A stretch of 64,000 nt of DNA from Ylistrum balloti (Eukaryota), in contig NW_026782466.1 in NCBI RefSeq assembly GCF_031769215.1, positions 558,001 through 622,000 on the forward strand. The letters run 5' to 3'. The notes under the pieces were generated by a model. That model had not been told where the DNA came from. It was given only the letters and a program-made list of their open reading frames with translations, and did not search any database. This document shows positions 709 through 30,436 of this stretch, one piece after another (positions within the stretch are counted from its first letter, which is position 1; each line of letters opens with the position of its first letter). A program made the translations under genes and the position numbers.

Positions 709-878
709 TCATAAATCTACACTGTTTTTATTTTCTTGTTTTACTTTGAAAAATATTTCATTGGTCAGATCAACATTCTCAACACAGATTTTTGTAAAAT
801 CCTGAAGTTGTTTGGGGGTAGCTCTACTTCTGCTTTCTGTAAACTTCAAATCTTCTTGCAGCAATAATTCCACTGGAC
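709..878 (-). CDS. Likely terminal DDE exon PVELLLQEDLKFTESRSRATPKQLQDFTKICVENVDLTNEIFFK(VKQENKNSVDL*)
   Basis: gctataacag acceptor in phase 1, with 55 open codons to TGA at 709-711 (an alternative donor at 744 is possible). PVEL aligns with the NPIEL motif that carries the catalytic Glu. Confidence 0.62.
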
Positions 879-3800
879 CTGTTATAGCAGTACTGGCAGT
901 GAACTATTAGTGCATATGTCTTGATTGTTTTCAACAAGTTTCCATCAAAAACAATGTAAAAATTTAATTTTTAAACAAATTTTCATTTCAATGACATCAT
1001 TAAAACTAAAGAAATTTGAAATGTCTCTCAATTCAGATGGCAGGAATCTTGGATTTTGCCGCGACCAAAAAAAAACATCTGTTGGGGACCATCTTAGAAA
1101 AAATTTAAACTAAATCCTACAAGTGTAACTTCAAAGGATGTTAAAAGCTTACACACAGTAGACGACAACACATGAAACAAGATGACTCCAAACACATGTT
1201 CTAAAATCTCAGTGATAACAAACAGAAGTAAGAGTCTTCTTTTAATTTGTATTTAATATGACTGTATAACAGTTAACACGTACAGTAATAACAGATATGT
1301 AAACATATACAATGTATTTTAACATTCACATGCCTTAGAGTTCATGTAAAAAGCCTATCCATGTAAAACAAATACAAATACTGTTTAAATTTTCATTGAT
1401 CTAAAGAAAAACTTGATTAAAATTAAAGATGGACAGCCTACCGTATATTTTCCCAAGTGACCAAAAAAATTAACGAGTAGTGCCTATGGTACAATAGCCT
1501 GTCTCATATTGTTCTTTGCTTAAACTAAAACTAGCATTAGGGTGGGGTTTCACCAACTGGAATCTATATCCCAATATACTGATATTTAAACAGGAAATAT
1601 GGTCTTCAAAAATTTGGTTCAAAAATGTTTGAAGAAAAAACAAATCTGACTTTTTTCTTAAAATTCATTTATAACTTCAGATTTTACATAAAAAAAGTCA
1701 GAAGTCCAAAATGTAATAATATAAAAACTATAAAAAAAAAAACCCAAAAAAACCATCTAGACTTTTTTCTGAAAAATTATTTATTCTGACTCCTATAAAT
1801 AATAGAAGCCACATAGCTACCCCCAAACTAAATGAGTTTATAAAGAAATTTAATGATGCCTTTCACCACTTAACATTTAGAAACCAACACTGAAGCTGGC
1901 ACTAATGTGACAAAATAAGCTCCCCACTCCTTTTGAGAGGCAAGTTAAAAATGAAGTAAACTCCATGTCTGGTACAGCACAAAATACATCCAACATGACA
2001 AAAAACCATTATAGGCTTCTTACAGTCCAAGACTTAAGTCAGTATGCTACCTTACAGTCCCAGACTTAAGTCAGTATGCTACCTTTCAGTCTCAGACTTA
2101 AGTCGAAATGCTACCTTATAGTCTCAGACTTAAGTCGGCATGCTACCTTAAAGTCAGTATGCTACCTTACAGTCTCAGACTTAAGTTGGTATGCTACCTT
2201 ACAGTCTCAAACTTAAGTCAGCATGCTACCTTACAGTCTCAGGCTTAAGTCGGTAATCTACCTTACAGTCTCTGACTTAAGTCGGTATGCTACCTTACAG
2301 TCTCAGACTTCAGGCAGCATGCTTCCTTTTAATCTTACTTAAATTGTGTTGTATGTACTATCATTTCTACAATTTACACTAATTGACTTTTATTACAAGA
2401 ATTGTAAAAGGTGAAACTATTCATTTGTGGCAACATGCACAATTCAGTTGATAATTTGACTTATGACCTTGACTTTGATCAAATGATCATGACCACAAAT
2501 CGTACAACTTGTTACACCACTGTTCAAAGGTAAACATAACAGAAAAACAAAGAGCAAAATAGAAGTTTTGTTAAACAAATGAACAATATGAACAGAACAT
2601 TTAATATAACTACATCATGTAAATACACTTGCACTGACTGTTGACAAGTGTGCCTCTGTCATGTGAATGCTGAGAGAGACACCCTCACCCTAACATACAC
2701 TTGGCATGAACACTTCAGTAGCATAAACAATGTAAATGGTCCCTGCCTGCACTGGACTTCACAAATATCTCACATGATTTCAAAGCAAAAGCATACCCAT
2801 AGGAAATACATTCTCACATTTCATGAGAAAATTTAAGAGCAATTGAAATAGGGAAGAATAAATCCTTATGGCATAAAAACAGAACGGTACTGAACACATC
2901 AAACATGTTTAAAAATTAAGTTTGGCTTTATCTTTTCTGGATTCTTTCAAAATATCCTTGTATACTCTAGTCTGTACAAACATTACATACATTCATCCTC
3001 AGTGTGGTCAATAACTCTCTACACATGCATATCATACTGAGGCTCAGAACACATTGTGAAATACAGAGACCTGTAAATAGGCCTGACTAAACAAATTAAG
3101 TGGAGACATTAAACAAATTTAAGTTGATTCAATGTTAATGACAACTCCAAACCCTTTTTATGCAATCATATAAAATCCAGTATACTGGGATATAAACTCT
3201 CAACTTTGTTAATTTGTGTAAATATTTGTAAATAGGAAGAGTAACGAGAGAGATAATGTCTGCCCTTGCTGTTGTAAATATAGGAAAATCAGCAATCTGG
3301 CCAATTGTTGACTCTAAAAATCATACAGTTATTGTTTCTCTGTACCAAGTGTTCAACGCCAAACTTAAAAATTCAGTGTTGGTCAACATTTGTCTTCATG
3401 CTGTATTTAATACATATTTGTTTGCCAACATGGTTTTTCAAGTGTCTGAGGTTCAAAACAACAGAATGAAGTTTTAAAGAATTTTAACAAGTAATGATAA
3501 AAATGTCTAAGGTAGAATTCATATAAACAAGAGGCCAATAGGGTCTGTGATGCTCACCTGGATATTCAAGCAATTTAGTTATACTACAAAGAATTTCCAA
3601 AAAGAACTTTTCAAGATTTACTTCCAGACCCTCTATCAGGTTCCGGCCTTCAATCCAAAGTGGACAGCCCTTCATTTATACAAAATGGAATTCCCTTGAT
3701 GTAAGGATGTAATATTTAGATAAAACACTTTTATCCCAATGATGAAGGACTAAAGATTTACCTATAATTTCCTAGGGTACATAGACTCAACATTTATACA

Positions 3801-6800
3801 AAATCAATTTTCCGCACAAGGATGCCTCGGACCAAAACTCATCCAGTTATCACAAACTCAAAGTGATCTAAAGATAAGCAGAAGAAAAGTTGCACTCAAT
3901 GGAATAAGGGCATCTCCAAATGTTCCTGTAGATGGAGTTAATTCCATAAGACTCTCTTCATACACCCACAGCTGTATGCAAGTATGTTTACATTTCAGCA
4001 TCTCCATCAAATTGACTTCAAGACACATATCTACACTTGAGTATCTTTACATTTCAGCATCTCCACCAAATTTACTTCAAGACACATGTCTTCACTTGAG
4101 TATGTTTACATTTCAGCACATCCCTAAGACACACTTCATATCACACATCTAGATGTGTGTACATTATAATGTTATAGAACCTCCACAAGACTTACTGCAT
4201 ACAACACATGTCTAGATGTGAATACTGTCACATTTCAGCATCTCTACTTAATTTACTTCATATCACAAGACACTTCATAACACACTTCTAGATGTGTGAA
4301 TGTAATAATGTTATAGCACCTTGACACGACTCACTGCATACAATTCATGTCCAGATGTGAATACAGTTACATTTCAGCAACTCCACAAGACTTTCTTCTT
4401 CATGTCTACGATATGAGTACTTCGACATTACTCAAAATTTGTATACACAACTCTCCCACTAATAGGTCAATTCATCTCCATTATGTTTATTGCACACATC
4501 TCCCACTCTGAGTACGAATTTTTCAAAATTACCAGTCACTGTCTGAAAAAGTTTCATCATTCTCAAGATTCTTAGTATACTAAATGTATAACTGTTTATT
4601 GTAATGGAGTTAAGAAGATTATTCACATGATCCTAATTAGAATGTAAATCAAGGTTCATCAAGGTGTACACAGTCAGGTATTTGAGGTGCTCATGTGTTT
4701 CTCACCAATTTGATAACTTCAGGTTTTTTATGCACTACCTGAAACAGAAACATAATACATACTAAAATTTAAAAGAACGTACTTGTTATGTTTTTATCAC
4801 TGACAGGGGCCGACCTTTTGTAACAAAATGTTATTTAATTTGAGGCTTTGTCTTAAAGAGATGTTACAGATTGTCAACCTGTTAATAATATTTTCTTAAA
4901 AATTCACATATTCAGTTCCGATTAGTTTTATTAAACTCATTAATTTTCTTTCTGTCAGGGCTCGACATAACTGTTTGGATTACGAACCTAGCAGGTGACA
5001 AACAAAACCTGTCTTGCTGAATGATCATGTCGCTTACCAAATACATTGCCATCAACATTACACAATTTCTATTTCTACCTTTTTGTTATCACTGGATATC
5101 TCGTAAACAAAGGAAAGCTCTTTGTTTAACTAACAGCAAAATTTACAATAATCAGAAGAGGAGATCTATTGGTGAAAAGTGGATAGCTCCAGGTCTTGAG
5201 AGTCTGTATGGTTCACAACATCTTATCAGACTTTTCACTAAATGATATTCATGGATAATTGTGTTTCCACTAGAGGAGGATTTCTAATACCGCTGTGTTT
5301 GTGCCTTCCTCTTATACTCACACAGAACCAGGAGCCCTGTGGTTATAATACATTCAAACTTATTCGACACAAGAAATTAAGAAATAGATTGATTGTATAT
5401 ACATTGTAAATTTTAATGAATACTTACTACAGATTTTTTCTCAAGTTCCAAATCAAATATGTGTGTATTTCTTGTTCTGAAAGAGTCAATAAACAAAAAT
5501 AAAGAAAACGTGTTTAACCATCATCAAAATCAATAATTCCTAGCTACCAAAAAAAATCAGTATACATCTCTCCAATGCCTTCCTTCAGCTGTTAAGTGAT
5601 GTATAAAGTTTGTTTCAAGACATGGGGGCTTGGCCCAACGATCAAGAAACAGTTTTTAAATATAACATCTAGGTACAAGCTGTAATACTTCTGTTTAAAA
5701 CAAGATCAGTTTTTGAGAAAGTAAAATAAGCAGTTTATAAGAGGACCGTTCCAATGAATGCAACATTTTATGACCAACAGGTTGGATAAGTTTGAGTGAA
5801 TTAGTTACCCAGCTATCACTGACAGTATTCAGATAAGATGCATGTGTCAAGAACATGATGTGTTGCTAACATGCTTCAAACTTACTGATATCCAAGTTTT
5901 CGAAGAGTTCGTCCAAGCACAACCTGTGATATGCTTAGTGCTGGATATTTCATTCTAAGAGCAGACCTTACATTCACTGTAGTAAAATTCACTTTCTTTT
6001 TCTCCAAATCCTCTAGAACATCTATAATGGCATCTTCTGTCGAGTTGCCTGATTCTGCCTGTGTTTTTTTTACTTCACCTCCGACACAACCTGATATTTT
6101 AATTACACAAAATCTATTAAAGGAAAACACTGAAGATAATCAATGTACAAGAAGGGTTTCTTGGTGGTATGAAAAATTTGAACAAAATTGTGAACAATGT
6201 GAGCAAAAGAATGGCTGATTAGTGGTACAGAAAAAATTGCAGACAACCTGTGTACAAGAAAGGCTGCATAGTTGTATGGGATAAAATTATGGACACCATG
6301 CGTACAAGAAAGGCTGATAAGTGGTATAGGAAAAAAATTGAGGACAACCTGTGTACAAGAACAGTTGATTAGCGACAAGGAAAAAATCGTAGAAAACCTG
6401 TGTACAAGAAAGGCCGATATGTGGTATGGAAAAAAAATTGTGGACAACTTGATGTTATACACTGTGGAGAAATTCTTATTTAAGTTAGTTATTCAGTTCA
6501 TAAATATCTCATGCACAATTTAAGGATGGACACAATGACAAAGTGATCACCATACCCAATATACAAAGTCAGGTTCATAATCAACAAAGAATGTGTTTGT
6601 ATGGAATTAATTACAGAGTGCTACACTACTACACCCTACCAAAAGGAACTTCAATCCAAAATCTGGAATTGTGACAAGTTTTTCTATCTTACTCTTTCAT
6701 CTCAAGAGATCTTCTGTTATTGGTAAGTGTAGTTGATACAGTATATTAGAAATGATCGATATTCGTTCATATGTAATCTATTCAAACATATCTGAAATTC

Positions 6801-9800
6801 CCTATTATAGAAAAATACAAGTTTAATTTTAGAGTAATAGATTTGAAGTTATTCTTCAAAGTTCAATGAAAAACGAACAGATTATTCATTATCATATCAG
6901 CCCAATACATTTTGTGTGGGGCGAGGCAAGATTTTTTTTAATCTTAATACATTTTACCAGAAAAATAACTCACGTTTAATAGCTATTTCTTTTTCGTTCA
7001 CAAGACCTAATTTCTTCCTCAATGTTCGAGTTGGCATACCTAAAACAGATAAAATGTATCAGTTTAATTTTATCAAGAGATATTTCAAGAATTCAGAAAT
7101 ATTATGGAAAGTATACTTAGAATTTGAAGTTAATAATACTTTTGTCTAATTTGTAATTTACCAGATGCTTCACTTAATCTCTTCATGGGGTTATTCAAGT
7201 TACTGACAGCGCCTGCTCTCTCCTCATTTTGAAAATACTGGAATACATTTTGCAACAGGGACTCCACCTGTACAACATGAAAAACACATCAAAGTTTTCA
7301 AAAGACACTACAAAATATGATTACAACCTTATTAAATGTGTTATATCTAGAAAGAAACACATTTTGATATTATACATAATGTCTATACATGTAGTTGTCG
7401 TTAAATTTGGATATTTTAAAATTAAGTAATGTCTTGTTTCCCTTCTTCCCTGGTCTTATTGAAAAATGAAACCAGTATTTCCTACAAAACACACCATTAA
7501 CAATATACAAACTATTCATCATTTTAAAGGAGTTGCTTGACTGAATATTCTGTGATCTATTAACTAAGTTGAGTTTTCTTTGCTTGATTCTTGCATAATG
7601 ACTGCCCCACACCCAGGTCAAATCTACCATATTTTAACCAAAAAAAGCTACAATCATATTCAGCTCATTCACGATATGTATTTAAATCATGAATGTCAAT
7701 TTAAGACGGCCACTGGGCCTGCATCGCTCACCTGTTTGTTAATTGACATGAAGTTGTGTAACATTAAAAGGTGACTGAACAAGTTACAACAACCTGTTAA
7801 GAATTTAAAACAGTTTACCTTCTGATGTTGAAAGTTTAACAAGGTTGTACAGTTGAACAAATTTGGAAACCATCATATCTTTAAGGTTTTCTGGTTACTT
7901 AGAATAAGTTGTTATAAATATTTTCAACCTATTTGACCAATGCTGGTTGACAAGGGCATACATTGGAATTAGTAATACTGTAGTGATTTAGTGAAATGAC
8001 ACCATCAGCAAAGCATGAAGATAGGGTTCCCTGTGTGGATAGCAAATCTGAAAGCATGATCATTGACTTCACTTAATAGTACAGTATAAAGGTTTCAATA
8101 GTAATGTTATGGTCCTGGAATTATTTGAAGATTTCAGAGGGAAGACTGGATGGAGTACAAGGCCAATCCTCACTATAAACCAATATATACAATGCATCTG
8201 TTTATCATAAGGTGGAGAATGGGGTAAATTGAGAAAATCACATTGAAAGTGGGTCAAGGTCATTCATTTGAACACACTTGGTAGTCCTTTTTCCCAGTAT
8301 GCTAAAGGCCCAATATCATTACCAATGGCATTTACTTTACCAAGAAGTTGTTTGAAGCTTTTTTAAACGTGTTTGACCCCTGTGACATTGAAAGAGGGTC
8401 AAGGTCATTCATTTAAACAAACTTGGTAGCCCTTCATCCCAGTATGCTGCAGGCCTAATATCAATACCCTTAGCCTATCTGTTACTGAATAGAAGTTGTT
8501 TGAAGATTTTCATACATTTGACCTCTGTGACCTTGAAAGTTGGGTCATGGTCATTAATTTAATCAACTAGATAGCCATTCAGCCCAGCATGTTACAGGCC
8601 CAATATCAGTACCCTGGGCCTTTTCATTATTGAGAAATTGTTTTAAGTGAAAAGTTAACAGACGGACGACACACCTTGACATAATCTCACTTGGCTCTTT
8701 GGGTCAGGTGAACTAGAAATGCAAAATTTCACCCTACTCCATTGGATTGCAGCCATGGAATTTATACAAGTAATTTTAGAGGGAAAAAACTTACAGTAAT
8801 TTCCGCTTTTTCTTTCATCTTCTCTCTGATACGGTTGGCTGTCCGCACAAGGTTTGAATGGATAGATCGACTGCACTCTGTTTCGTCTCCCTCAGCATTG
8901 TCCAGCAACACAGAATTGACTAGGGCTGGACCAGTATCCAAGATGTTTTGTTGGGCCAGCAACTTTACCTGTGTGACAACATTCATGAATGAATTAAAGT
9001 TCTACAAACTTGCCTCAATGAAGTTCATTGAACTATAACATTAGATCTATTTACAACTCTATAACCAGGCTCAATAAACTAATAGTCTTATAACCTGGAA
9101 CTTGAGCCCTTAGTCTGCTGTTAAGACCTATTACCTGATTCCATAAACTTCCAATACTTTTATGGGCACATGTGACTTTTATTCCTATTACATTTATCTT
9201 CAGCTTCAGTTCTTTAACCCTGTTTGCTGACTTTCAGTCTCTAACCTAGTTTGAGGACTATTTAGACTCATTACCTGGTTTGATGACCTTAAGACTTATT
9301 ACCTAGTTTGATGACCTATAGACATATTACCTGGTTTGATGACCTTAAGACTTATTACCTGGTTTGATGACCTTTAGACTTATTACCTAGTTTGATGACC
9401 TATAGACATATTACCTGGTTTGATGCCCTTTTGTCTTATTACCTGCTTGATGACCTTGAGACTTATTACCTGCTTGATGACCTTAAGACTTATTACCTGG
9501 TTTGATGACCTTAAGACTTATTAACAAGTTTGAGGACTATTTAGACTTATTACCTGGTCTGATGACCTTGAGACTTATTACCTGCTTGATGACCTTGAGA
9601 CTTATTACCTGCTTGATGACCTTAAGACTTATTACCTGGTTTGATGCCCTTTTGTCTTATTACCTAGTTTGATGACCTTAAGACTTATTATCTGGTTTGA
9701 TGACCTTAAGACTTATCACCTGGTTTGATGACCTTGAGACTTATTACCTGCTTGATGACCTTAAGACTTATTACCTAGTTTGATGCCCTTTTTTCTTATT

Positions 9801-12738
9801 ACCTAGTTTGATGACCTTAAGACTTATTATCTGGTTTGATGACCTAGACTTATTACCTGGTTTGATGACCTTAAACTTATTACCTGGTCTGATGACCTTA
9901 AGACTTATTACCTGGTTTGATGACCTTAAACTTATTACCTGGTCTGATGACCTTAAGACTTATTACCTGGTTTGATGACCTTAAACTTATTACCTGGTCT
10001 GATGACCTTAAGACTTATTACCTGGTTTGATGACCTTAAACTTATTACCTGGTCTGATGACCTTAAGACTTATTACCTGGTCTGATGACCTTAAGACTTA
10101 TTACCTGGTTTGATGACCTTAAGACTTATTATCTGGTTTTATAACCTTTACTCTAATTACCTGATGAATGCCTGATGGCAATTATGGACCAAAGAGAACC
10201 TACATAATATGAAATCTGGAAAAAAAAAACGTCAAGTATTTTCCAAGAAGCAGCAATAACAAACTTTCATTGTTAAAATCCAAGATGGCCACCTGTGAGC
10301 CATTTTTTTCTTGATTACTTCCAAAATCAAAACAGCACAACTAGTAATCAGGAGACCTGTATATAAAATTTTACAGTATTTTTCAAAAAATAGTGCTAAC
10401 AAGATGGATGACAGACCAAAGACATAGGACAATTTGAATAGCCTATCATCTGATGAAGGTGAGCCAAAAAACAATGAATAAGGAAAATTACCTGTTTCCT
10501 GATCTTGACCTGCTGGACACCATCTGGTTTTGGCAAGTGTCCATGTTGCTGGTCGTTACGAATAAAAACATCATCACCCTCCTGAATCACACCAGCCCCA
10601 CAGCTGTATTGTTTCCCTCTCACAGCACAACGCCAGTACATTCTTTTCAAGTTGGCCTTTTTCCCCTGTAATTGATTTTTAGAAGAAAACTCTAGATCTA
10701 ATCCTGCGACCTATTAGAATCACAACTTTATTTTTAGGAATGATACTTTCCTTGAAAACAATTGGTATTTATTATTCAAATCTGCAGTAGAACACTCACC
10801 TTGTATCTCCCTCTTGACTTCACATTTGAAGTGCGTCGTAGTGTGTAGCCATATCCAAAGCTATCCATCAGCTTAGGAAGGCCCCGCTGTGATGCAGACT
10901 CAATCACTTCAAATGTCAAAGGTTTAGTGTATGATGCTGCTCTACAAGGGAGGAAAGTACAACTTTAAGACTGCAAAGTAAAGACTGAGAATCAATTAGT
11001 ATTACATGAAAATAGTATGTTCATCAGCAGAGGCTCAAACACTGAAGAATTTATGCATTTTTTTTTCATTAGATTTACATTTTTGTGGTTTCAGGAGAAG
11101 TGGAGAACTTAAGAGGCTAGTGTATGTGTTTAAACAGCCTTATAATGATGTACATTTCAGCATAAAATGGCACTTTAGTGCAATTAATAAGCATTTTTTT
11201 TACAAGAACAAACAACATAAAAATGAACTCTGTAAACAATGCAAGTATTGTATAATGACATAAGCATGTCAGAAGAACCTTACAAACTTTCTAGATGGGT
11301 GATATCATCCAATCACAAAAGCTGATAACTTACTGTATTGCCATAATTGACGATGCTGCTTCCATTTCTTCACCACCACCACCATTTTCACTAGAAATAC
11401 TGCAGTCCATGGGTTGGGCAGTGCTTTCATCTTCTTCTCTTTGTGGCTCTACTTTGGTGACGTTGAATTCTTGGTTGCCTACTTTAATTCGAGTAACACG
11501 GTGAGCATCTGTAGCTGTTGTATCTATCACAATACTGGAAGAAAACAAACCATACATATACATATATAGTTCTCATGGTCACAGAAGTCCTACACTCAGA
11601 TGTCAACTACATTAGTTATTACCATTTGAAAGTCTGTATAGCTTCTAATATAGAGAAATTGAAGTCAGTAATAAATATTCAAAGAAAGATTTATGAACTT
11701 AATTCAAAGCCACCTCTCTTATTTCACAATCACCATGAAGATTATGCAGCCACGACCTTGACCTACAATGTACATGAATGAAGCTGACCTTCAACTATTT
11801 CAAAAGAACAAAAGCAGTAATATTTGCATGAAGTTTCATGGAACATAGGGACATGCCAAATATTCTACTTCGAATATCATCATGAAAAGATTTTGCAATA
11901 TATATTAGCTGTGACCTTGACCTAAAATCATGATCACAGATAACTGATAATGACCTTTCACTGAGACTGAATACATAAAAAAGTTTGTTCAATTTACAAA
12001 TGGATAAAATAAATTTCATCAGAAAATGATAATCACTCTTTCTTTTGCTATGCCAGCTACAGTTAGTATAGGAGTGTCCCAAAGAAAATATGAAGATTGA
12101 AGACAGTCATGATACTGTAGTCATGTACCATAAATGTACTAGACCTAGCTTGATGTTAAAATACAATATCATGACATACATTTCTCTTCGGTATAACAAT
12201 ATATAGATATACACTTACACTTCTTCATTGACATGTTCCGGTGGTATTACTAGGTACTGCTCTTCTGTGCTGCACTCTGCTGGAGTGTTAGAATTACTGC
12301 CACTTGCCTCAAATGCCTTGGCAATCAGAGATTGGACCTTTATATATTACATAAATATGCACATTTACAAAGGCTGCCATAAAATGTTTTTCATCAATAT
12401 TGTCATACAAAGAACAGGTTAACAGTTTATAAAATTTATGTTTCAGGCTAGTAAAGCTAAAACTTTGTAGCTGATTGTAGTTTAATAGTGCATCGGCTTT
12501 ACATATAAGGTACCATATACTCAAATGACTTGTCATTGTGTAAAGAAGAAATTTAAGTCTGCAAAATAAATTCACAGTAGCTTTTGCCATATGTACCACA
12601 GTTTGTTAGAAGTGGCCATATTAGATCAACATATGTCAGCTGTCAATTACAACTTAAGCTATTGGAGAATCTCTCCAAATGCCCGATACAAAATAGAGGC
12701 AATACGATACTTACCTCTGTTGAAGCTTCAGCCTCCAT
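709..12738 (-). CDS. Multi-exon gene: FLYWCH zinc finger fused to IS630/Tc1-mariner (Sailor-like) transposase-derived HTH domains and a putative degenerate DDE domain (domesticated chimeric transposase)
   Basis: Eight phase-consistent GT-AG exons (12715-12738, 12219-12337, 11334-11534, 10800-10941, 10492-10665, 8795-8968, 7162-7267, 5882/5886-6090) give an uninterrupted 382-aa ORF if read to the TAA at 5882. A further putative micro-exon chain runs down to 709. The 5' eight exons are well supported; the 3' extent is less certain. Confidence 0.8.
1153..3313 (-). CDS. Putative micro-exon chain for a degenerate DDE core: 3246-3313, 3038-3070, 2797-2864, 2699-2751, 1867-1901, 1554-1578, 1442-1483, 1382-1400, 1153-1200
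   Basis: All are AG/GT-bounded and phase-consistent (0-2, 2-2, 2-1, 1-0, 0-2, 2-0, 0-0, 0-1, 1-1). The peptide includes ARLLIF..G, ENVFPMVQAGTIYIV, QLQCWF and KYTINENLNKHVFGVIL, in the order of the Sailor-type motifs RLII..G, EKLIPNLPPNSVLVID, MQ.WL and KY.ID.I...HGH.VL. Some donors are weak, one intron is only 45 nt, and manual overfitting is possible. Confidence 0.45.
2020..2328. repeat. Minisatellite, 32-bp unit (TTACAGTCTCAGACTTAAGTCRGTATGCTACC), about 9-10 copies
   Basis: TACAG recurs at 2021 and 2053; each unit contains the palindrome GACTTAAGTC. Confidence 0.95.
3526..3872 (-). mobile_element. Decayed HINE (Helentron non-autonomous element)
   Basis: Left end AACAAGAGGCCAATAGGGTCTGTGATGCTCACCTG is Box2-like; degenerate right end ACTCAAAGTGATCTAAA; satellite-like interior. 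Confidence 0.6.
3858..3971 (-). CDS. Candidate exon for the first catalytic strand (LWVYEESLMELTPSTGTFGDALIPLS), donor unresolved
   Basis: catacag acceptor and 37 open codons. LWVYEES resembles IVY.DET and TFGD resembles SWSD. No good donor was found before the stop, and the segment abuts a HINE. Confidence 0.35.
   Translation of the reverse strand: MWVYEESLMELTPSTGTFGDALIPLSATFLLLIFRSL
3975..4410. repeat. Degenerate ~60-bp tandem repeat (core TACATTTCAGCATCTCC...ACTTCA...CACATGTCTA)
   Basis: TACATTTCAGCA recurs at about 58-60-bp spacing, then at about double spacing. Confidence 0.8.
4706..5336 (-). CDS. Three putative micro-exons: 5322-5336 (15 nt), 5079-5091 (13 nt), 4706-4738 (33 nt), encoding QAPGSVDNKKVVHKKPEVIKL
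   Basis: Sites are accacag|...|gtgagt, atccag|...|gtagaa and ctgtttcag|...|gtgaga, with consistent phases (2-2, 2-0, 0-0). The peptide resembles the remembered linker GF.Y.K..NRK.L.E..DI that follows the winged HTH in this family. Confidence 0.5.
5882..6090 (-). CDS. Coding exon, second (winged) HTH (EDAIIDVLEDL...FTTVNVRSAL...ISQVVLGRTLRKLGY); ends at TAA 5882-5884 or splices at 5886
   Basis: aaaatatcag acceptor in phase 1. T...L..L.....S...L.R.L.K.G[FY] winged-HTH pattern. The terminal sequence CAGTAAGT is both a stop codon and a consensus donor. Confidence 0.85.
6200..6450. repeat. Degenerate ~50-bp tandem repeat (AAAAAATTG..GACAACCTGTGTACAAGAAAGGC), about 5 copies
   Basis: TGTACAAGAA recurs at about 50-bp intervals; this explains ORFs 6103-6462 and 6272-6523. 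Confidence 0.85.
7162..7267 (-). CDS. Coding exon, first HTH of an IS630/Tc1-like (Sailor-type) transposase (SLLQNVFQYFQNEERAGAVSNLNNPMKRLSEAS)
   Basis: ttgtacag acceptor, G|gtaaat donor, phase 0 to 1, bridging the flanking exons. Matches the remembered pattern I..NVY.F...E..G....L.....R.AEATGVS. Confidence 0.83.
7703..8716 (-). mobile_element. HINE (Helentron non-autonomous element) with internal 145-bp satellite-like repeats
   Basis: Box2-like AAGACGGCCACTGGGCCTGCATCGCTCACCTG at left. Box1-like ...GACGGACGAC...CTCACTTGGCTCTTTGGGTCAGGTGAACTAG at right, with sub-terminal inverted CTCACCTG/CAGGTGAA. Three units start at 8245, 8390 and 8535. Confidence 0.85.
8795..8968 (-). CDS. Coding exon, MULE-type post-FLYWCH helical region (VKLLAQQN...SNLVRTANRIREKM)
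   Basis: cacacag acceptor, ACT|gtaagt donor, 174 nt, phase 0 to 0. NL.R.ANR.R resembles the segment that follows FLYWCH in MULE transposases. Confidence 0.88.
9244..10148. repeat. Minisatellite, 27-28-bp unit (GACTTATTACCTGGTTTGATGACCTTAA), about 32 copies
   Basis: Directly visible tandem array in the intron between the FLYWCH and post-FLYWCH exons. Confidence 0.97.
10492..10665 (-). CDS. Coding exon, C-terminal half of FLYWCH domain (MYWRCAVRGKQYSCGAGV...FIRNDQQHGH)
   Basis: ttacag acceptor, CAG|gtaatt donor, 174 nt, phase 0 to 0. Contains YWRC-x8-C...H-x-H zinc ligands. Confidence 0.92.
10800..10941 (-). CDS. Coding exon, N-terminal half of FLYWCH domain (LTFEVIESASQRGLPKLMDSFGYGYTLRR...)
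   Basis: cccttgtag acceptor, AAG|gtgagt donor, phase 2 to 0. The S.RG..KL.D..GY.Y pattern is typical of FLYWCH domains in animal MULE transposases. Confidence 0.9.
11334..11534 (-). CDS. Coding exon, acidic/disordered linker (IVIDTTATDAHRVTRIKVG...EEMEAASSIMAI)
   Basis: tttcttccag acceptor, CA|gtaagt donor, 201 nt, phase 2 to 2; lies inside ORF 11330-11563. Confidence 0.88.
11750..11945. repeat. Remnant of a GACCTTGACC-type bivalve satellite/HINE interior
   Basis: Two GACCTTGACC motifs and TGCATGAAGTTTCATG, typical of HINE-borne satellite monomers. Confidence 0.45.
12219..12337 (-). CDS. Coding exon VQSLIAKAFEASGSNSNTPAECSTEEQYLVIPPEHVNEE
   Basis: aag|GTC acceptor, GT|gtaagt donor, 119 nt, phase 0 to 2, open frame. 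Confidence 0.85.
12715..12738 (-). CDS. First coding segment MEAEASTE (exon about 12715-12770)
   Basis: Acceptor tgttttacag, ATG in AAAATGG context, donor GAG|gtaagt, phase 0 matching the next exon. Confidence 0.75.
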
Positions 12739-14278
12739 TTTCTATCAATAACTATAGCCTGTTTTAGTTTCTGTAAAACACAACACAAAAAGTATATAGC
12801 AAACAATTAAATCTCATCTAGTTTGTTTTACTCAAATTAATTTGGGGTACTGTATTTAGTCAAATGACTGTGTATAGGTGAATTAAAATTTTCGGTAATT
12901 GCCATGATTATGATTATTAGAATTTAACTCCTCCAATTATATATACATGATTCACCAAATTATTCTTGATCGATATTTCATAAATCATATAAATTTCTAT
13001 TTAGATGCCGATGGAATCATTGTCAACCAAATTAAAACCAAATGAAGCCTCAATTCAAGTTGTCTATACACAGATTTGTTAGCTTGTAATCACTGGGTTT
13101 TTATGCAATGAATAACCAGGGTGAACAACTGAGCTGGGTCTCAGACTCTCCTGTTAGTAACAAATGGCCATTTATTACTGAACAACAACAGTAGTAGGAT
13201 TGAAACATCCTCCCATTGGATACACAAAACAGCTCCGAAAGTATGGTCCCATTTGGATACATTAAAGTGTTTTGCCCAATCATGACAGCACTGAATGATC
13301 CATAATTTCTCAAGACATAAACAAAGCGCAAATTACCAAGGATCAAACCAAACACCTTGGAATTCATCACACAAGTTTTCAAAAGCTGATTAGCTGTATA
13401 ATTTTTTTGAGTAGCAGGTGAAATTGATCTTTACTGCAAAAGGTTGCAAGTTTGAGCACTATTAAGGGATATGTCATTTTGTATCGCCTATTCCTTCATA
13501 TTACACACTTGACTAGTAACATTAACAAATGGGAATTATCTCCTATTTTGAAAACAGAAGTATATTAGTATAATATGTAATACAGTGGGTACTGCAACAC
13601 ACTATATTTGTCACACGAGACACAGATTTCTGGTTATAACTTAATCAAGGGAGGTCATTAAATTATCCTGCATCAAGGAATATCTACAATACCGCCGAGC
13701 GAAGGGCAACTCATGTAAAAATGATTACTTCTAAACAAGGAGTGTTCCCACTTCCACAACAATTAGTTTAGAAAGCAAGACTTGTTTTATATACACGAAC
13801 AATGAGCGATTCTGTGTATAATAAAGAGATATTTACCATATCGGATGGAGAAAAAAAACAATTCAAGTCTACAGTATACTAACCTAGCTATGATTGTTAT
13901 TATTGATTAACCAGCTTTGTCATCTGTATATATCTGCCTACGCTTATCATTTTTTATGGCAAGTTACTTGATGGATCAATTCAAACTTCTGATATCCAGT
14001 AACATCCCTTTAAAGTATTGTCAACATTGCAATAACGTCCAAAAAGATTTATTTCGCGAGACAAATTCAACATAACACTCATAAAAACATAAACATGCCC
14101 GATTTGACTGTCAATCGCGGAAAGTCAACTCGTGTAACGGCAAGGTCCATTCGCCAAGTACGACATATAGCACTTATAGCGACAAAATTTCACCAGCATA
14201 TAATTTCTTCCATATAATCGAATACGTTGTTACAGATAATAGTTTCTGTGAGTTGCATTTCTCTTAATGATAACTTAC

Positions 14279-14395
14279 CGTCACAATATCAGAAGAAACA
14301 AATGTGCGAAATGTCTTCGAACGAATTGACTAATGGATGCGCGCCTCGTTTCGGAGATTAAAAGCGTCTCAGGGACTGCGATTTTGGCGGGATTG
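14279..14395 (-). promoter_or_regulatory. Putative non-coding first exon (donor at 14278) and CpG-rich promoter with E2F-like site TTTTGGCGGGA (14382-14392)
   Basis: Donor ACG|gtaagt on the minus strand, local CpG enrichment, GCGCGC and E2F-type motifs just upstream. Confidence 0.55.
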
Positions 14396-16650: not shown

Positions 16651-17647
16651 TTGTCGTAAACTTTAAGCTAAGATCTGTAATTTCATTTTCGATGAATTAT
16701 GTGGAACCTTGGGGTGACAGGTGCACAAACGCCATATCATCAATTTAAAGTATAAGTGTTTGCTATCCGCAGCTTATCAGACGGATATTAAAACATCACA
16801 GGTGGATTGTCATACATGTTTAACACAAGAAAATAAAGCCACTTTGCTTAAGCAACAAAACGTTGTTTACAACGACTTACCTCCCTTCCTACCTTACCTC
16901 GTTCATTTACGAGCGATTGGTAGGATCATTGAATGTGTGCCTTCCAAAGTCAGTGTGGCGTTGGTGTAAATAACGGGGAATAAATTAAGGTAACTTGAAA
17001 ACACAGGGAACGTAATTTTTTAGATTCTATCTATTTCAAAAGTGATTTCATAAAATAACAAGCGCACACACATGGAGTGAAAATTAAGATATTTAACGAT
17101 TACAGACTCGCTTCTAAACGTAAGATGGGAGAATATTTAGAATAATGAAAGAGCAAATTCTGTTGGATACGAGCTCGGATGATCAATCAAAACTAACAGA
17201 AAATTCATTCACATGTTTGTACGTAAACTCTTTTAAATATGCTTACCTGCTTGTAATCTTTAAAAATGTCACCAATTAGGTAATTTCTTTAATATTTATT
17301 TCATATATGGCAATGTACTTGGAACTCTCTAGTGATGGATATACATGTTTTAGTAAGGAACATGCATCCTTAAACACCTGTCATTGACCAGAATCATTCA
17401 TCGTAGATTACTACTGCCTTCAAAGTCTATTGAATTCCTGAAATCTAGTCACACGAAAATCACATTTGTTCACACAAATCTCAAATCTTTACCGGTGCCG
17501 TTGTAAGCTATACACATTTAAGTACATTTCTATTTACCAGACAAAACAAGGAAAGAAAATCAATTTCAAACAGCGATGAGTCCATTCAGGGTTTAACTAA
17601 CACAAACATTTATTTTCAATGAAATGTTTGGTCAAATTCACTGTCAA

Positions 17648-17704
17648 TATATAAAAGAACATCGCGAGTTTGGGATTAAATCTCATCAGAATGCTACTAT
17701 AAAG
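17648..17704 (+). promoter_or_regulatory. Candidate TATA boxes (TATATAAAAG 17648-17657; TATAAAG 17698-17704) upstream of the FAM89/LURAP-like gene
   Basis: Motif match and position about 0.7 kb upstream of the first coding exon; weak evidence in AT-rich DNA. Confidence 0.3.
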
Positions 17705-18420
17705 GGTGATGGATTTAAACGTGAATACTGCTCTTGAAGAACTAAATGACGGGTGCGAAATGGCTATCCCCAAGTGGAGCGTTAAACAACTTAACATCCA
17801 CACGTTGAGGGGATGTCTGTAGATGTTTATTTACATAGGAACTTCTATAATGTATTCTGGTCAGGACAAAATAGAGTTCATAAGTATTTTAATTGGTCCT
17901 CGGGATGGCCCCTCGGGACGCATGCAGTACGCCATGATGTATTGCTGAGAGCGTTAAGCCATTCTGTGATTTTACATGGGAGAATTTCATTATTAGCATG
18001 CGACATTAATGTAAACTGCCATGTTCTGTATTTTTATAAATGTAAATAATGACAAGTGGGATTTAAGTGGATAAATAGTATATACTTGCTTTCTCCTGTA
18101 AGGGTATAATATATTGGTGTCTGACACGCAGCTGTCATTAATTTCGGGTGAAAGAGCCATTGACAAAAGCCTTCGAGACTTGGAACTATTCATGTTACAT
18201 AACAACAATACATGTACCCTAACGGACCCGCCGCTACACGCTGTATACATGCAGATGTTTGATGGATCAACTTGATTACAGGTTGGAGAAGTGAAACACC
18301 TTCGAAAAACAAGTTCATTTGGATGGGACCCTGTTGTTAAGGACTAAAAAGTATTGTGTCTCCTTCTGACCCCTCACGGGTGCCGAGCCTGAACTGTCTG
18401 TTGCCCCATGGGATTCCTAG

Positions 18421-18468
18421 ATGAGTACAATTATGGATATTCTGCTACATCAACTGAGAGACGAAGTG
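18421..18468 (+). CDS. FAM89-like: First coding exon of the FAM89/LURAP-family gene: MSTIMDILLHQLRDEV
   Basis: Strong donor GTG|gtaagt in phase 0. Joined to 43889 it gives LLHQLRDEV|VDLRTQSSELTRQMWLLYVTFEDF, matching FAM89 [32 protein letters not shown]. As I recall, vertebrate FAM89 has an intron at the same position. The start is ATG 18421 (in-frame TAG just before it) or ATG 18433 (better Kozak). Confidence 0.8.
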
Positions 18469-18488
18469 GTAAGTTTAGACAATGCCAC

Positions 18489-18542
18489 CGTCGGAAACCC
18501 ACGAGACTCTCTTCTGCCGTTAAGTCTCGTCGGTTTCCGACG
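18489..18542 (+). other. Near-perfect hairpin (19 Watson-Crick pairs, one C-C mismatch, 14-nt loop) 20 nt downstream of the exon-1 donor
   Basis: CGTCGGAAACC-C-ACGAGACT pairs with AGTCTCGT-C-GGTTTCCGACG. Confidence 0.85.
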
Positions 18543-19753
18543 ATGAAATAATGCTTGCAAACTGGGTTCTGCAGAGGAAACGTCTGGTCTCGCAATGGAT
18601 TCATTGCTTTACTCTGGCATGTCCTGTTGACGAAAGCTTTGGTGATATGCTTTACTAACATCCGAAAATTATATATAAAAGATATATACACATATATATA
18701 TATTGATAATAAATGGTACAATATGTACGTATGTGACAAGTGAACTAAATGTATGCCTATTTATTACTGTGATTTCATTTCGCACAGTTGCCCATCCTGC
18801 CATGGGGTACGTGGCTCCAACCGTATCTAAATCTTCTCATTCAGAAAATCTAAATCACCATTCTCGATAACGTGTCTTCCTATGAACAATATTCATTGTA
18901 AACATTAATAAAATTATTAAAATAATTTCCCTCATTTGTCATCCCAAAACGATCTTATTGCGGTTATATGACAACTAGTTTAAAAATTTCGAGTTTTCTG
19001 CTTTGTACAGATTGGGGTAAAAAGCAAATGTTTAACCTATAAAAAATGCACGTATATTTTAACAAAACAGTCTACCTGAAGATCTTCAGATGAGATATGT
19101 GATGAACCCCCCGTCTCAGGTGCCGAAATCATCTCTCAGATATGAATATTTCTGCGTGGTCGCTCCTGCTGCTTTGATCTTTGTGTTCAAGGAACCGTGA
19201 AATGCTTGTCTATGTAGCGTTTTAATAAGGTTTTTGTGATAAGTATGTTCGTTTCAAGCTATATCATCTTCATGTTGTGTGAGGGGAATAATTTTGAGCG
19301 CTATTAAAATTACGAAAAAGGGAGAAAATCTGGGTTATGATAGTAATCTTATCTTCGTGTCTATTCAGTGAATGTAGAAAGATAATTTACCAATCCATCA
19401 CCAAGTCTTTACATCCGATCGAGACAGATAGTTCATATAAACACGACTCATCTCTGCACAACATCTGGTTTTCTCTTTATTGTTGTGAAATCAGAGAATT
19501 TTCAACTCTAAGGGTCGTACCTGTGTATAAATCTTTGCACTTACAAAACTTAGCTATGCATATCCTATACATCAATGACAATTGATTACAACTTTTTCAC
19601 GGGAAGATCCGTGTGACTTAAGGGTGTATGCTATGTGTACAACAAACTATTGAACACATGTTTACACCTGTCACCACTGTAGTTAGACTATATTAACGCA
19701 AATCCGTCATTTTGAAAGCTTAGTGTATATTGTATACATTAAAACTGAAAATA

Positions 19754-20040
19754 ACAAGATGTGTTTATGAAACACTATGCCCTCGGTTGCAACAACATTC
19801 AAAATTGAAACATTAAATTGTACTGTGTACGGCATGTGCTAATTGCATTCACAATTTTCAAATGTAGGTCAAAGGTTATGGTCAAGGTCACATTGTAAAA
19901 AAGGAACAAGGAACACATACGCCAAAACGTAAAGCCTTATCTTTTATGGTGCAATAGTTATGGGCAATATTAAAGTTGACAACATACAAACAAAATCAAA
20001 CAGACTGAGACAAACAAATAGACAGCACAAAAATCCTTAA
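19754..20040 (-). mobile_element. Decayed HINE of a second family
   Basis: End AACAAGATGTGTTTATGAAACACTATGCCC, internal GGTCAAGGTCAC, and a degenerate (GACA)n microsatellite near the other end. Confidence 0.6.
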
Positions 20041-26000: not shown

Positions 26001-26096
26001 TGTACTTAATCACTGTCACACAAATAGATATCTTCTTCATTAGTCAGTCATCGTGTATCGCCAACGTCTGGTATCATTGGTCAGTAGTAGGACCAC

Positions 26097-28548: not shown

Positions 28549-30229
28549 ATTGCTAAAATGACAAGGTTTTATTTGATATCTGACGCCTAACGTTTTACGT
28601 GTACAACACCGATAGAAAGTCGTTCTATTTATAAATTGATTAGTTTAATTAATATCTCTATAAATTAAGTTAACTCACTAAACAAATCAATATTATATGT
28701 CGTGGACATTCCTTTCATTTTCAAATAAGTTAGGTTTTCGTAATCATTTCGTTTGAAGGTTTATCATAAAACTAAAATAGATCAGTTTTTTCAGTGATTA
28801 ATTTGATTGATCTAAATATATGTCTTGTTGATGTCTTCCCGTATACAATGGAGTGAAAACGCAGAATATGTTTGCTGTATTAATCATTGCCGTACTCAAT
28901 ATAGTCCTATTTCTTCGTGGTTCTTTATCCAGCTTAAAGCACGCAATCAGCCGTCCAGTTTAGTTACACCCTCTTTTAAGGATGGTCACGGACCAAATAC
29001 ATTTTGTTAAACATGCGGACAACTTATTGAATTTTATGGATAATCGATAATTTTTAACGTCATTATGATATTGTATGATGTGAAATTATTCCTTTCATCT
29101 TTCAAATAAGGAAAATGTGGTTTATAAATAAGTGTGTTAATTACTGACGGTGTTATGATTTTATGAATGAGTTAATGTGCTTATATGGACCAGATAACGC
29201 CATACAGTCATATCAATACACTAATTATTGTATAACTGATGTGTTTTTGTAAAATTGGTGACGACAAATTGGAAATTAAATCATTAGGGAAAAAACATAA
29301 AATCTGGTAAGATGGATATGCATTTGTCTGACGTGATTTTGATAATTAATCATAAAAATAAATGTTGATAATTGAATTGTAATAGCTTCGTTATAAATAT
29401 CCTAAACATGATTGCCACAAATAATTTTAAGCTTGCGAAGATAAGTGGATAAAAAGTTTGCTATGAGTACTGTTCAATTTGTTGATACCAAAGCTTGCGA
29501 TCATTTTTATATTTCCCTTGCAACCTTGTTACTCCTCTGGGACCTCGTTCAGAGCAGGAGTGGCCCTAACCCAAAATCTATGCGAGTTATTAAAACCGTC
29601 TATAATGCAGAACTTTGACCCTTCATTGTCCCTTAGATCAGTGGAACACCTCTAGCCGTCCTGTGAGGTGATGAGGGACATGTTCCGTTAGTTCTCTTAC
29701 ACTGTGGGCGTACAGGCGCAAACACAAAGGTCCGCCAGTTGGTGACACCGTATTGAATAGCAGTACCAATTACACCCCAAATATTGGAGCACCGATATTG
29801 AAAACAAACTCGTGAGTTGAAGAGGCTGGTCACTCTTGGTCAGTAAGGAGGTCCGTTGCTTCTCCAGAGGTGCCAATTGTCCAGGGAAGTACGACAGATG
29901 TGCGCTCTCTACGCGCCAGTGTATTGTCGCGTGCTCACGGAAGACAGATGCCCGACTTAAAGAGCTCAAAAAAAGGCCACGAAGGGTAAGTGTCCGGGTG
30001 AGGAGAGCCAATATCAGTCCGGAGGAGCTTGACCTGTAACTAACACCGTCCAACAATACAGTTCATTTCCCGTTACACTGCCCTAACCTGTAATTCAATT
30101 TCCTCAACAATATTATGGCTTAGTGAAGGTCTTCAGGTTTGGGTCAGTTCTGTGCAGCATGGCCACCCTCACTGTTGTGATACTGACGAAAGTAGCATAA
30201 TGATACGATAGCTTAATCATATACCTTGA

Positions 30230-30436
30230 CCGGACAGAAGGACAACCGGACAGTAGGACATCCGGACAGTAGGACAACAGGACAGTAGGACAACCAGAGA
30301 GAAGGACAACCGGAGAGTAGGGCAACCAGAGAGTAGGATATCCGGACAGTATGACAACCGGGCAGTAGGACATTCGGACAGAAGGAAATCCTGATAGTAG
30401 GACATCAGGACAGTAGGACAACCGGACAGTAGGACC
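30230..30436. repeat. 16-bp tandem repeat (GGACAGTAGGACAACC), about 13 copies
   Basis: Directly visible; produces spurious ORFs 30113-30421 and 30217-30405. Confidence 0.93.

What the first reader, a model, noticed from the sequence alone, without database searches (positions are those of the whole stretch)
709..12738. Host gene built from two unrelated DNA-transposon superfamilies: MULE-type FLYWCH plus IS630/Tc1 (Sailor-like) transposase
Seen in sequence: eight phase-consistent exons encode an acidic leader, a complete FLYWCH finger, a NL.R.ANR.R helix and two HTH-like modules. Established knowledge: FLYWCH with that helix is the DNA-binding N-terminus of animal MULE transposases, and the NVY.F..E / AEATGVS / L.R.L.K.GF series is the DNA-binding region of Sailor (DD82E) transposases. 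Inference: exon-level fusion made a single domesticated factor with two specificities. It has a non-coding first exon, an E2F-type promoter and no terminal inverted repeats. I do not know of a described gene with this architecture.
Basis: partly seen in the sequence, partly recalled or inferred. Interest (0 to 1): 0.85.

Follow-up and report, generated by a model that had tools for sequence, protein, structure and literature searches.

The report
Scallop FLYWCH plus winged-helix host gene
This is a real, intron-rich, single-copy scallop gene (already predicted in RefSeq, function unknown) for a DNA-binding protein with a FLYWCH zinc finger followed by a helix-turn-helix and a winged helix. The claim that its second half comes from a Sailor/IS630/Tc1 transposon is not borne out by the tests that could be run.

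Summary
The model is incomplete. The window encodes, letter for letter, RefSeq XP_060079187.1 (Ylistrum balloti LOC132558612, "uncharacterized protein", 428 aa) from 11 coding exons spanning 12738-4691 on the minus strand.

- A 66-nt micro-exon (7039-6974) that carries the recognition helix of the first HTH.
- The last two coding exons.
- Positions 709-4690 are not coding.
- The non-coding first exon and a conserved E2F-like site do exist, but at 14279-14392, outside the stated span.

**Evidence for a host gene**
- Orthologues with the same exon structure and the same upstream neighbour occur in Pecten and Mizuhopecten.
- An Argopecten orthologue clusters with one set of transcript-like contigs, and a fifth, unidentified taxon has its own.
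- Synonymous sites are saturated while pN is 0.16-0.43.
- There are no terminal inverted repeats, no DDE domain and no dispersed copies.

**Domains**
- FLYWCH is supported: all five orthologues hit Pfam, though under its cut-off; the signature residues are invariant; Atlas features score 0.92.
- The C-terminus folds as a three-helix HTH, a KRCVGGE linker and a generic winged helix.
- Its transposase link is only sub-threshold: HTH_Tnp_Tc3_2 in one of five orthologues, and hhalign probability 0.4% against IS630.
- "Sailor" is unsupported.

Modest interest.

The parts
14383..14392 (.). E2F-like site TTTGGCGGGA (written on the + strand). It sits about 45 nt upstream of where an orthologous 5'UTR starts to align, and is invariant in three scallops.
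   Evidence: It is unique in the window (0.03 expected). It has one mismatch to the strict TTTSSCGC consensus. Function is inferred only.
14279..14340 (-). Non-coding first exon. The 5' end is approximate. The conserved donor is CG|GTAAGT, with 14279 as the last exon base.
   Evidence: The block is conserved in Pecten and Mizuhopecten (A3). The 5'UTR of transcript-like contig L003 aligns to 14338-14294. An acceptor, ttttacag, lies at 12771 ahead of the ATG exon.
12715..12770 (-). Coding exon c1. The ATG is at 12738 (MEAEASTE); 12770-12739 is 5'UTR.
12219..12337 (-). Coding exon c2. Isoform X2 uses the acceptor at 12316; isoform X1 starts 21 nt earlier (about 12337) and adds VQSLIAK.
11334..11534 (-). 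Coding exon c3: conserved IVIDT motif and the acidic, disordered leader.
   Evidence: pLDDT is under 50.
10800..10941 (-). Coding exon c4: first half of FLYWCH (LTFEVIESASQRGLPKLMDSFGYGYTLRR).
   Evidence: F118, L132, Y138 and Y140 are invariant.
10492..10665 (-). Coding exon c5: second half of FLYWCH (YWRCAVRGKQYSC...HGH), following a phase-0 intron.
   Evidence: Pfam FLYWCH E 6e-4 for this exon alone. W166, C168, C177, H196 and H198 are invariant.
8795..8968 (-). Coding exon c6: helical region with the invariant NLVRTANRIREK stretch.
   Evidence: Helices 204-267 in the model.
7162..7267 (-). Coding exon c7: helices 1 and 2 of the first HTH (NVFQYF..., NPMKRLSEASG).
6974..7039 (-). It holds the recognition helix of HTH1 (MPTRTLRKKL) and the start of the linker (EIAIKR).
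   Evidence: It is present in all orthologues and in the same place in L005 and L006.
5886..6090 (-). Coding exon c9: invariant CVGGE linker and the three helices of the winged helix (...SQVVLGRTLRKLGYQ).
5428..5476 (-). Coding exon c10: the beta-hairpin 'wing' (TRNTHIFDLELEKKSVV).
4691..4738 (-). Coding exon c11: basic tail VHKKPEVIKLVRNT and the stop codon.
   Evidence: The equivalent end is seen in all five orthologues.

Best explanation
This is an ordinary nuclear host gene of scallops (Pectinidae): RefSeq LOC132558612 of Ylistrum balloti, with one non-coding and eleven coding exons over about 9.7 kb on the minus strand. It encodes a 428/435-aa multi-domain DNA-binding protein.

Shown:
- The domain order is an acidic disordered N-terminus, one FLYWCH zinc finger (CCHH ligands invariant), a conserved helical segment, a three-helix HTH, an invariant KRCVGGE linker, a winged helix and a short basic tail.
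- The gene is single-copy, syntenic, keeps all intron positions in three genomes, and evolves under purifying selection.

Inferred:
- It acts as a lineage-restricted sequence-specific transcription or chromatin factor that contacts DNA through the FLYWCH finger and the HTH/winged-helix pair.
- The acidic leader would serve as an effector or interaction region.
- A TATA-less promoter with a conserved E2F-like site hints at proliferation- or germline-linked expression.
- The FLYWCH finger probably goes back to a MULE-type transposase, as is generally accepted for this domain.
- The origin of the C-terminal module is open.
For: - The CDS built from the window equals P0003 / XP_060079187.1 exactly, with all introns GT-AG.
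- Orthologues occur in Mizuhopecten, Pecten and Argopecten, plus one unidentified taxon. These five clusters are the only hits in 5.8 billion proteins, and exon c9 finds only them in 1.84 billion representatives.
- There are eleven coding exons at the same positions in Pecten (L005). Mizuhopecten (L006) has the same eleven, plus an extra 15-nt micro-exon in isoform X1.
- The upstream neighbour is collinear in all three genomes.
- Uninterrupted 1.3-kb ORFs with UTRs sit on 1.4-1.8-kb contigs in four public runs, which reads as spliced mRNAs.
- pS is 0.70-0.81 (saturated) against pN 0.16-0.43. dN/dS is about 0.16 overall and 0.06-0.11 in the FLYWCH and helical parts.
- The four listed exon differences in a second individual are all synonymous.
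- FLYWCH: Pfam hits in 5 of 5 orthologues (best whole-protein E 0.0014), Atlas feature score 0.92 to FLYWCH clusters, and the UniProt name.
- C-terminus: the AF2 model (pLDDT 67) shows HTH plus winged helix. Winged-helix matches reach Z 7.9-8.1 over 64-74 residues.
- No TIRs were found.
Against: - There are no RNA data for Ylistrum itself (run X1 is DNA).
- FLYWCH scores (17.7-20.4 bits) are below Pfam's cut-off of 23.6, and the finger is poorly modelled (pLDDT under 50).
- The alignment behind the models has only five sequences.
- DNA binding, nuclear location and E2F control are all inferred.
- The winged-helix Z-scores are in the range the tool calls 'a common arrangement'.
Confidence: 0.75

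Rival explanations
1. One reading: an exon-level chimera of two domesticated DNA-binding modules. The FLYWCH finger would come from a MULE transposase, and a paired-like bipartite HTH domain from an IS630/Tc1/mariner (ITm) transposase, specifically Sailor (DD82E).
For: - FLYWCH is the N-terminal DNA-binding domain of many animal MULE transposases (PMC5225508; PMC10027918).
- ITm transposases carry two HTH motifs with a linker motif between them (PMC8533490). This protein has HTH, linker and a second HTH-type module in that order.
- P0006 hits HTH_Tnp_Tc3_2 at E 4.6e-4.
- NCBIfam gives IS481 at E 0.008 and IS630 at E 0.075, in one member each.
- Atlas features for exon c9 point to transposase HTH_33/HTH_32/IS630 clusters at 0.81-0.90.
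- The top Atlas fold hit is an arthropod DDE_3 transposase, TM 0.37.
- CENP-B(1-129) appears at Foldseek rank 8 over 126 columns.
- A FLYWCH-MULE element was noted elsewhere in this genome (s1-234454, unchecked).
Against: - Every transposase signal is below threshold and appears in one orthologue only.
- Three of five orthologues hit the Stork_head winged helix at E values (0.005-0.04) in the same weak, sub-threshold range.
- hhalign of the family profile against IS630 N-termini gives 0.4-1.7% probability.
- The second module is a true winged helix resembling Fur, PadR, cullin WHB and LOTUS. No Tc1, mariner or Pax domain appears among the top 50.
- The linker is KRCVGGE, not GRPR.
- No relative was found in bacterial genomes or metagenomes, although Sailor occurs in bacteria.
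- No TE-like paralogue was found in any protein search.
- Nothing ties it to Sailor rather than any other HTH family.
Confidence: 0.2
2. That would make it an intron-bearing transposase gene.
For: Only that two tiny coding exons (5476-5428 and 4738-4691) do exist in that stretch, and that two short conserved blocks lie at 1296-1239 and 669-562.
Against: - All five orthologues stop at the equivalent ...VIKLVR.. tail.
- The transcript-like contigs have a stop followed by 266-434 nt of UTR.
- No DDE or transposase family is hit by any orthologue.
- Downstream conservation is limited to two short non-coding blocks, one of which holds AATAAA.
Confidence: 0.02
3. It is an active or recently decayed composite transposon rather than a host gene.
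For: None beyond the presence of a TE-associated domain.
Against: - No TIRs.
- One copy per genome at a syntenic site.
- Ten conserved introns within the coding region.
- Purifying selection with saturated synonymous sites.
Confidence: 0.01

Closest known systems
FLYWCH-type zinc-finger proteins (Pfam PF04500; C. elegans PEB-1/FLH, Drosophila Mod(mdg4), human FLYWCH1; lineage-specific TE-derived FLYWCH factors surveyed in PMC10027918)
   Same: It has one FLYWCH finger with the F-L-Y-W-C-H signature and CCHH ligands. It is a lineage-restricted host gene with no orthologue found outside the scallop group, which is the pattern that paper reports for FLYWCH factors.
   Different: The finger scores under Pfam's cut-off and has a basic insertion between its halves. 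It is combined with a C-terminal HTH plus winged helix, not with BTB, further FLYWCH repeats or a MULE catalytic domain.
IS630/Tc1/mariner (ITm) transposase paired-like DNA-binding domain, including Sailor DD82E (PMC8533490) and Pfam HTH_Tnp_Tc3_2
   Same: The order is the same: a three-helix HTH, a short conserved linker, then a second HTH-type module ending in ...L.R.LRKLGY. One orthologue gives a weak HTH_Tnp_Tc3_2 hit.
   Different: The second module is predicted as a winged helix with a beta hairpin. There is no GRPR motif, no DDE/D domain, no TIRs and no significant sequence or profile match. Nothing is specific to Sailor.
Generic winged-helix DNA- or protein-binding domains (Fur/PerR, PadR/LmrR, cullin WHB, Oskar LOTUS, ORC/Cdc6 WH; Pfam Stork_head)
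   Same: Residues 340-414 superpose on these at Z 7-8 and rmsd 2.3-3 A over 64-74 residues. Three orthologues give weak Stork_head hits.
   Different: Sequence identity is only 7-19%, and the Z values are within the range the tool says a common arrangement gives. No family membership can be claimed.
Animal MULE transposases with an N-terminal FLYWCH (Aedes Muta families, PMC5225508)
   Same: They share a FLYWCH DNA-binding finger near the N-terminus.
   Different: There is no MULE DDE domain, no TIRs, and the gene is single-copy and syntenic.

Membership tests
FLYWCH zinc finger (PF04500) | Signature residues F, L, Y, W, C, H in order over about 60 aa, with C..C...H.H zinc ligands | tested here: met
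   F118, L132, Y138/Y140, W166, C168, C177, H196 and H198 are invariant in five orthologues.
FLYWCH zinc finger (PF04500) | Score at or above Pfam's gathering cut-off (23.6 bits) | tested here: not met
   Scores are 17.7-20.4 bits (E 6e-4 to 4e-3). All five orthologues hit, but only profile positions 17-62 align, because of an insertion between the halves. Independent support comes from Atlas features at 0.92 with 197 shared and the UniProt name.
FLYWCH zinc finger (PF04500) | WRKY-GCM1-type beta-sheet fold | tested here: inconclusive
   The model shows four or five strands over residues 119-180, but pLDDT is under 50. There is no PDB sequence hit.
IS630/Tc1/mariner transposase DNA-binding domain | Significant match to an ITm HTH family (HTH_Tnp_Tc3_2, HTH_Tnp_IS630, HTH_33, etc.) | tested here: not met
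   Ylistrum has no hit. Only P0006 hits HTH_Tnp_Tc3_2, at 20.9 bits against a cut-off of 31.5. NCBIfam IS630 gives E 0.075 in one member. hhalign against IS630 gives 0.4-1.7% probability.
IS630/Tc1/mariner transposase DNA-binding domain | Paired-like domain: two three-helix HTH motifs with a GRPR-type motif between them (PMC8533490) | tested here: inconclusive
   Two HTH-type modules are predicted in that order. However, the second is a winged helix and the linker is KRCVGGE, not GRPR.
IS630/Tc1/mariner / Sailor (DD82E) transposon | DDE/D catalytic domain (DD82E for Sailor) | tested here: not met
   The protein ends 31 aa after the winged-helix helices in all orthologues. No DDE family is hit.
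IS630/Tc1/mariner / Sailor (DD82E) transposon | Terminal inverted repeats and TA/TATA target duplication; multiple copies | tested here: not met
   No flanking inverted repeat. One syntenic copy per genome.
   No Sailor sequence could be obtained. Indirectly negative: no relative in bacterial genomes or metagenomes, where Sailor occurs, and none in the protein libraries.
MULE transposase | MULE DDE domain (PF10551), TIRs | tested here: not met
   No such Pfam hit. No TIRs.
Domesticated (host) gene | Single copy, conserved synteny and introns, purifying selection | tested here: met

The most novel reading that the evidence does not exclude
The C-terminal HTH-linker-winged-helix module could be a very diverged, domesticated ITm- or pogo-type paired-like DNA-binding domain. 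The scallop gene would then be a chimera of DNA-binding domains from two different DNA-transposon superfamilies (MULE FLYWCH plus ITm HTH), fixed before the pectinid radiation.
Probability: 0.2. Interest if true: 0.6.

Novelty: new variant of a known kind. Interest (0 to 1): 0.3.

Why it matters
If it is only what the evidence shows, it adds one more lineage-restricted FLYWCH-type DNA-binding gene in molluscs, here with an unreported partner module (HTH plus winged helix). It also gives a clean, curated exon model, including a 66-nt micro-exon that encodes a recognition helix. That is useful for annotation and for studies of transposon-derived transcription factors in Lophotrochozoa, but it is not surprising.

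If the C-terminus were shown to be ITm-derived, it would be a rare documented case of one host factor assembled from the DNA-binding domains of two transposon superfamilies.

Tried and rejected
- **Exon-by-exon Pfam:** only a half-FLYWCH hit, and no HTH family.
- **PDB sequence searches** with exon c9, the full-family profile and the FLYWCH profile: only chance hits (mS31, L10, I-CreI).
- **Exhaustive phmmer of exon c9** against 1.84 billion representatives: one orthologue and one spurious repeat protein (P0002).
- **Three word-indexed searches** (whole P0001, C-terminal region of P0003, profile A1): orthologues only.
- **tblastn of the P0006 C-terminus against plasmids**: nothing.
- **Back-translated pattern scans** of bacterial genomes and metagenomes with A2: nothing.
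- **IS630 comparison:** fetched IS630 from a plasmid record and 80 close relatives to build a comparator. hhalign gave 0.4-1.7%. That comparator is shallow (66-95% identical) and bacterial, so this is a weak negative. A first plasmid stretch held no IS630.
- **RNA evidence for this species:** none. The only run holding the stretch (X1) proved to be DNA of another individual.
- **The frame the ORF list suggested for a last exon at 873-709:** rejected, because no orthologue contains it and the phase does not fit.
- **SRA run numbers of the transcript-like contigs:** not found in papers, so the taxon of P0006 stays unknown.

Full report
**1. What is in the sequence**

They are 11410-11334, 10941-10800, 10665-10492, 8968-8795, 7267-7162 and 6090-5886.

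An exhaustive phmmer search with the 67-aa exon 6090-5886 against 1.84 billion representatives found one true relative, P0001 of Mizuhopecten yessoensis, 440 aa. These were an upstream coding exon and a micro-exon at about 7040-6972 encoding GMPTRTLRKKLGLVNEKEIAIKR.

A search with P0001 returned four more clusters. One of them, P0003, is RefSeq XP_060079187.1, [quoted passage not shown]. It maps to the window at 100% identity, so the window is Ylistrum balloti (Ballot's saucer scallop).

A boundary search requiring GT-AG gave one model whose translation equals P0003 plus a stop. The coding exons are:
- c1: 12738-12715
- c2: 12316-12219
- c3: 11534-11334
- c4: 10941-10800
- c5: 10665-10492
- c6: 8968-8795
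- c7: 7267-7162
- c8: 7039-6974
- c9: 6090-5886
- c10: 5476-5428
- c11: 4738-4691

Isoform X1 (P0009, 435 aa) uses an acceptor 21 nt upstream in c2.

Their model ran from exon 6090-5886 into the TAA that overlaps its donor. Skipping c8 keeps the frame, which is why the error was invisible to them. Positions 709-4690 carry no coding exon of this gene.

**2. Promoter and first exon**

The ATG exon is preceded by an acceptor (ttttacag at 12771), so a non-coding exon must lie upstream.

A block at about 14400-14270 is conserved in Pecten and Mizuhopecten at the matching distance from their start codons. It ends in an invariant donor, CG|GTAAGT, with 14279 as the last exon base. The 5'UTR of the transcript-like contig L003 aligns to 14338-14294.

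About 45 nt upstream lies TTTGGCGGGA (14383-14392). It is invariant in the three genomes and unique in the window. It departs by one base from the strict TTTSSCGC consensus, which has no match near the gene.

Any E2F function is inference only.

**3. Host gene or mobile element**

- No inverted repeats flank the locus.
- Each genome has one copy.
- Pecten maximus (L005) has the same eleven coding exons at the same positions. Mizuhopecten (L006) has them too, plus an extra 15-nt micro-exon in isoform X1. Both keep the phase-0 intron inside the FLYWCH finger and the 66-nt micro-exon.
- The upstream neighbour is collinear in all three genomes.
- P0005 clusters with Argopecten irradians XP_069141546.1. 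P0005 and P0006 are encoded as uninterrupted ORFs with UTRs on 1.4-1.8-kb contigs in two runs each. I read these as spliced mRNAs. They join the FLYWCH exons to the HTH exons, include the micro-exon and stop at the same tail.
- Between the Ylistrum CDS and those two contigs, synonymous sites are saturated (pS 0.70-0.81) while pN is 0.16-0.43. dN/dS is about 0.16 overall and 0.06-0.11 in the FLYWCH and helical segments. The winged helix is the least constrained, with pN/pS of 0.54-0.68.
- The one public run holding this DNA (X1) is genomic DNA of another individual. The four exon differences it lists are all synonymous third-position changes. A further 27 differences were not shown.

There is no RNA run for this species, so splicing in Ylistrum itself rests on the RefSeq model and the orthologues.

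**4. The domains**

*FLYWCH.* All five orthologues hit PF04500 at 17.7-20.4 bits, under the cut-off of 23.6. Only profile positions 17-62 align, because a basic insertion separates the halves. The signature residues and the C168/C177/H196/H198 ligands are invariant. Atlas features for residues 109-271 give 39 FLYWCH clusters at up to 0.92 with 197 shared features, and one FLYWCH+MULE cluster at 0.81. UniProt names the Mizuhopecten protein "FLYWCH-type domain-containing protein". I accept the FLYWCH assignment.

*Helical segment.* Residues 204-271 hold the most conserved stretch outside the finger, NLVRTANRIREK. It has no family hit.

*C-terminus.* AF2 on the five-sequence alignment gives a moderate model (pLDDT 67 for residues 262-428). 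It has helices at 272-285, 298-306 and 310-316 (HTH1), a poorly modelled linker around the invariant IKRCVGGE, and helices at 340-359, 366-376 and 384-393 followed by two strands, which together make a winged helix.

Structure searches return only generic winged helices:
- The all-against-all VIA search gives a best Z of 7.9 (APC2 WHB, ORC/Cdc6, Stn1, FurB).
- Foldseek against the PDB has nothing at E of 0.001 or lower. The best hit is Fur at 0.04. CENP-B(1-129) is at rank 8 (E 0.44) and IstA is at rank 41.
- The VIA second look gives FurB at Z 8.1, then LmrR, cullin WHB and Oskar LOTUS.
- In the ESM Atlas, the first row is an arthropod DDE_3 transposase cluster, but at TM 0.37.

**5. Is the C-terminus transposon-derived?**

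Signals for:
- P0006 alone hits HTH_Tnp_Tc3_2 (E 4.6e-4, 20.9 bits, cut-off 31.5).
- NCBIfam gives IS481 at E 0.008 and IS630 at E 0.075, in one member each.
- Atlas features of exon c9 point to HTH_33/HTH_32/IS630 clusters at 0.81-0.90 with few shared features.
- The module order matches the ITm paired domain described in PMC8533490.

Signals against:
- The Ylistrum, Mizuhopecten, Pecten and Argopecten-type sequences have no such hit. Three of the five orthologues hit the Stork_head winged helix at similarly weak, sub-threshold E values of 0.005-0.04.
- hhalign of the family profile against IS630, both as a single sequence and as a 10-sequence N-terminal alignment, gives 1.7% and 0.4%. That comparator is shallow and bacterial.
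- No relative was found in bacterial genomes or metagenomes or on plasmids.
- No TE-like paralogue appeared in any protein library.
- The linker is not GRPR.

Nothing addresses Sailor specifically, and no Sailor sequence was available. I put ITm or pogo ancestry of this module at about 0.2 and Sailor at a few percent.

It is contradicted by the shared stop in five orthologues and by the UTRs of the transcript-like contigs.

**6. How it most likely works**

Shown: a conserved, constrained protein with a zinc finger of a DNA-binding class, plus an HTH and a winged helix.

Inferred: it is a nuclear, sequence-specific DNA-binding factor. The FLYWCH finger and the HTH/winged-helix pair give two DNA-contacting (or one DNA- and one protein-contacting) surfaces, and the acidic leader acts as an effector region. 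Alternative splicing near the linker may tune the spacing of the two C-terminal modules; examples are the 66-nt exon and a 15-nt VPSLG exon in Mizuhopecten X1. The E2F-like promoter element suggests proliferation-linked expression.

**7. Novelty**

The gene is already predicted in RefSeq for four scallop species but is uncharacterised. I found no paper on it. PMC10027918 describes lineage-specific FLYWCH factors in other animals. The FLYWCH plus HTH-winged-helix combination, restricted to five clusters in 5.8 billion proteins, is a new variant of a known kind. Interest is modest, at 0.3. It would rise to about 0.6 if the two-transposon chimera were proven.

Noticed in passing
window 8240-8615 and 10200-10400: An intronic 145-bp tandem repeat (2.6 copies) and a second intronic stretch are very high-copy in the genome. 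Summed word depth in DNA run X1 is about 17,000-32,000 and about 1,160, against about 10 for the flanks. This suggests a satellite or SINE-like family.
   Followed up: partly
window 9244-10163: A 28-bp minisatellite of 33 copies at 87% match, inside the 1.5-kb intron between coding exons c5 and c6. It produces the run of small 'MMTLRLI...' ORFs on the + strand.
   Followed up: no
window 6207-6448 and 2019-2328: A 49-bp tandem repeat in the intron before exon c9 creates a spurious 119-aa ORF (6103-6462). A 32-bp tandem repeat lies downstream of the gene.
   Followed up: no
window 43877-47389 (+): An uninterrupted 1170-codon ORF, rich in S, P and Q with a poly-Q/coiled stretch near the end, and no Pfam hit. 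It is probably a giant exon of the upstream neighbour gene, since the Pecten neighbour product is 1180 aa.
   Followed up: partly
window 17355-19366: Exons of the upstream neighbour (on the + strand, divergent from this gene) are conserved at 55-85% translated identity with the matching flanks in Pecten and Mizuhopecten. This shows conserved synteny.
   Followed up: partly
window 1296-1239 and 669-562: Two non-coding blocks 3.4 and 4.0 kb downstream of the stop are conserved in all three scallop genomes (72-93% identity). The first holds AATAAA at 1257 and 1246. They may be a distal poly(A) site of a long 3'UTR or a regulatory element.
   Followed up: partly
L006:19989-20003 (Mizuhopecten): Isoform X1 of the Mizuhopecten orthologue has an extra 15-nt micro-exon (VPSLG) between the 66-nt micro-exon and the winged-helix exon. 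Alternative splicing therefore targets the linker between the two C-terminal modules.
   Followed up: no
window 37762-37904: A run of 143 N (assembly gap or masked).
   Followed up: no
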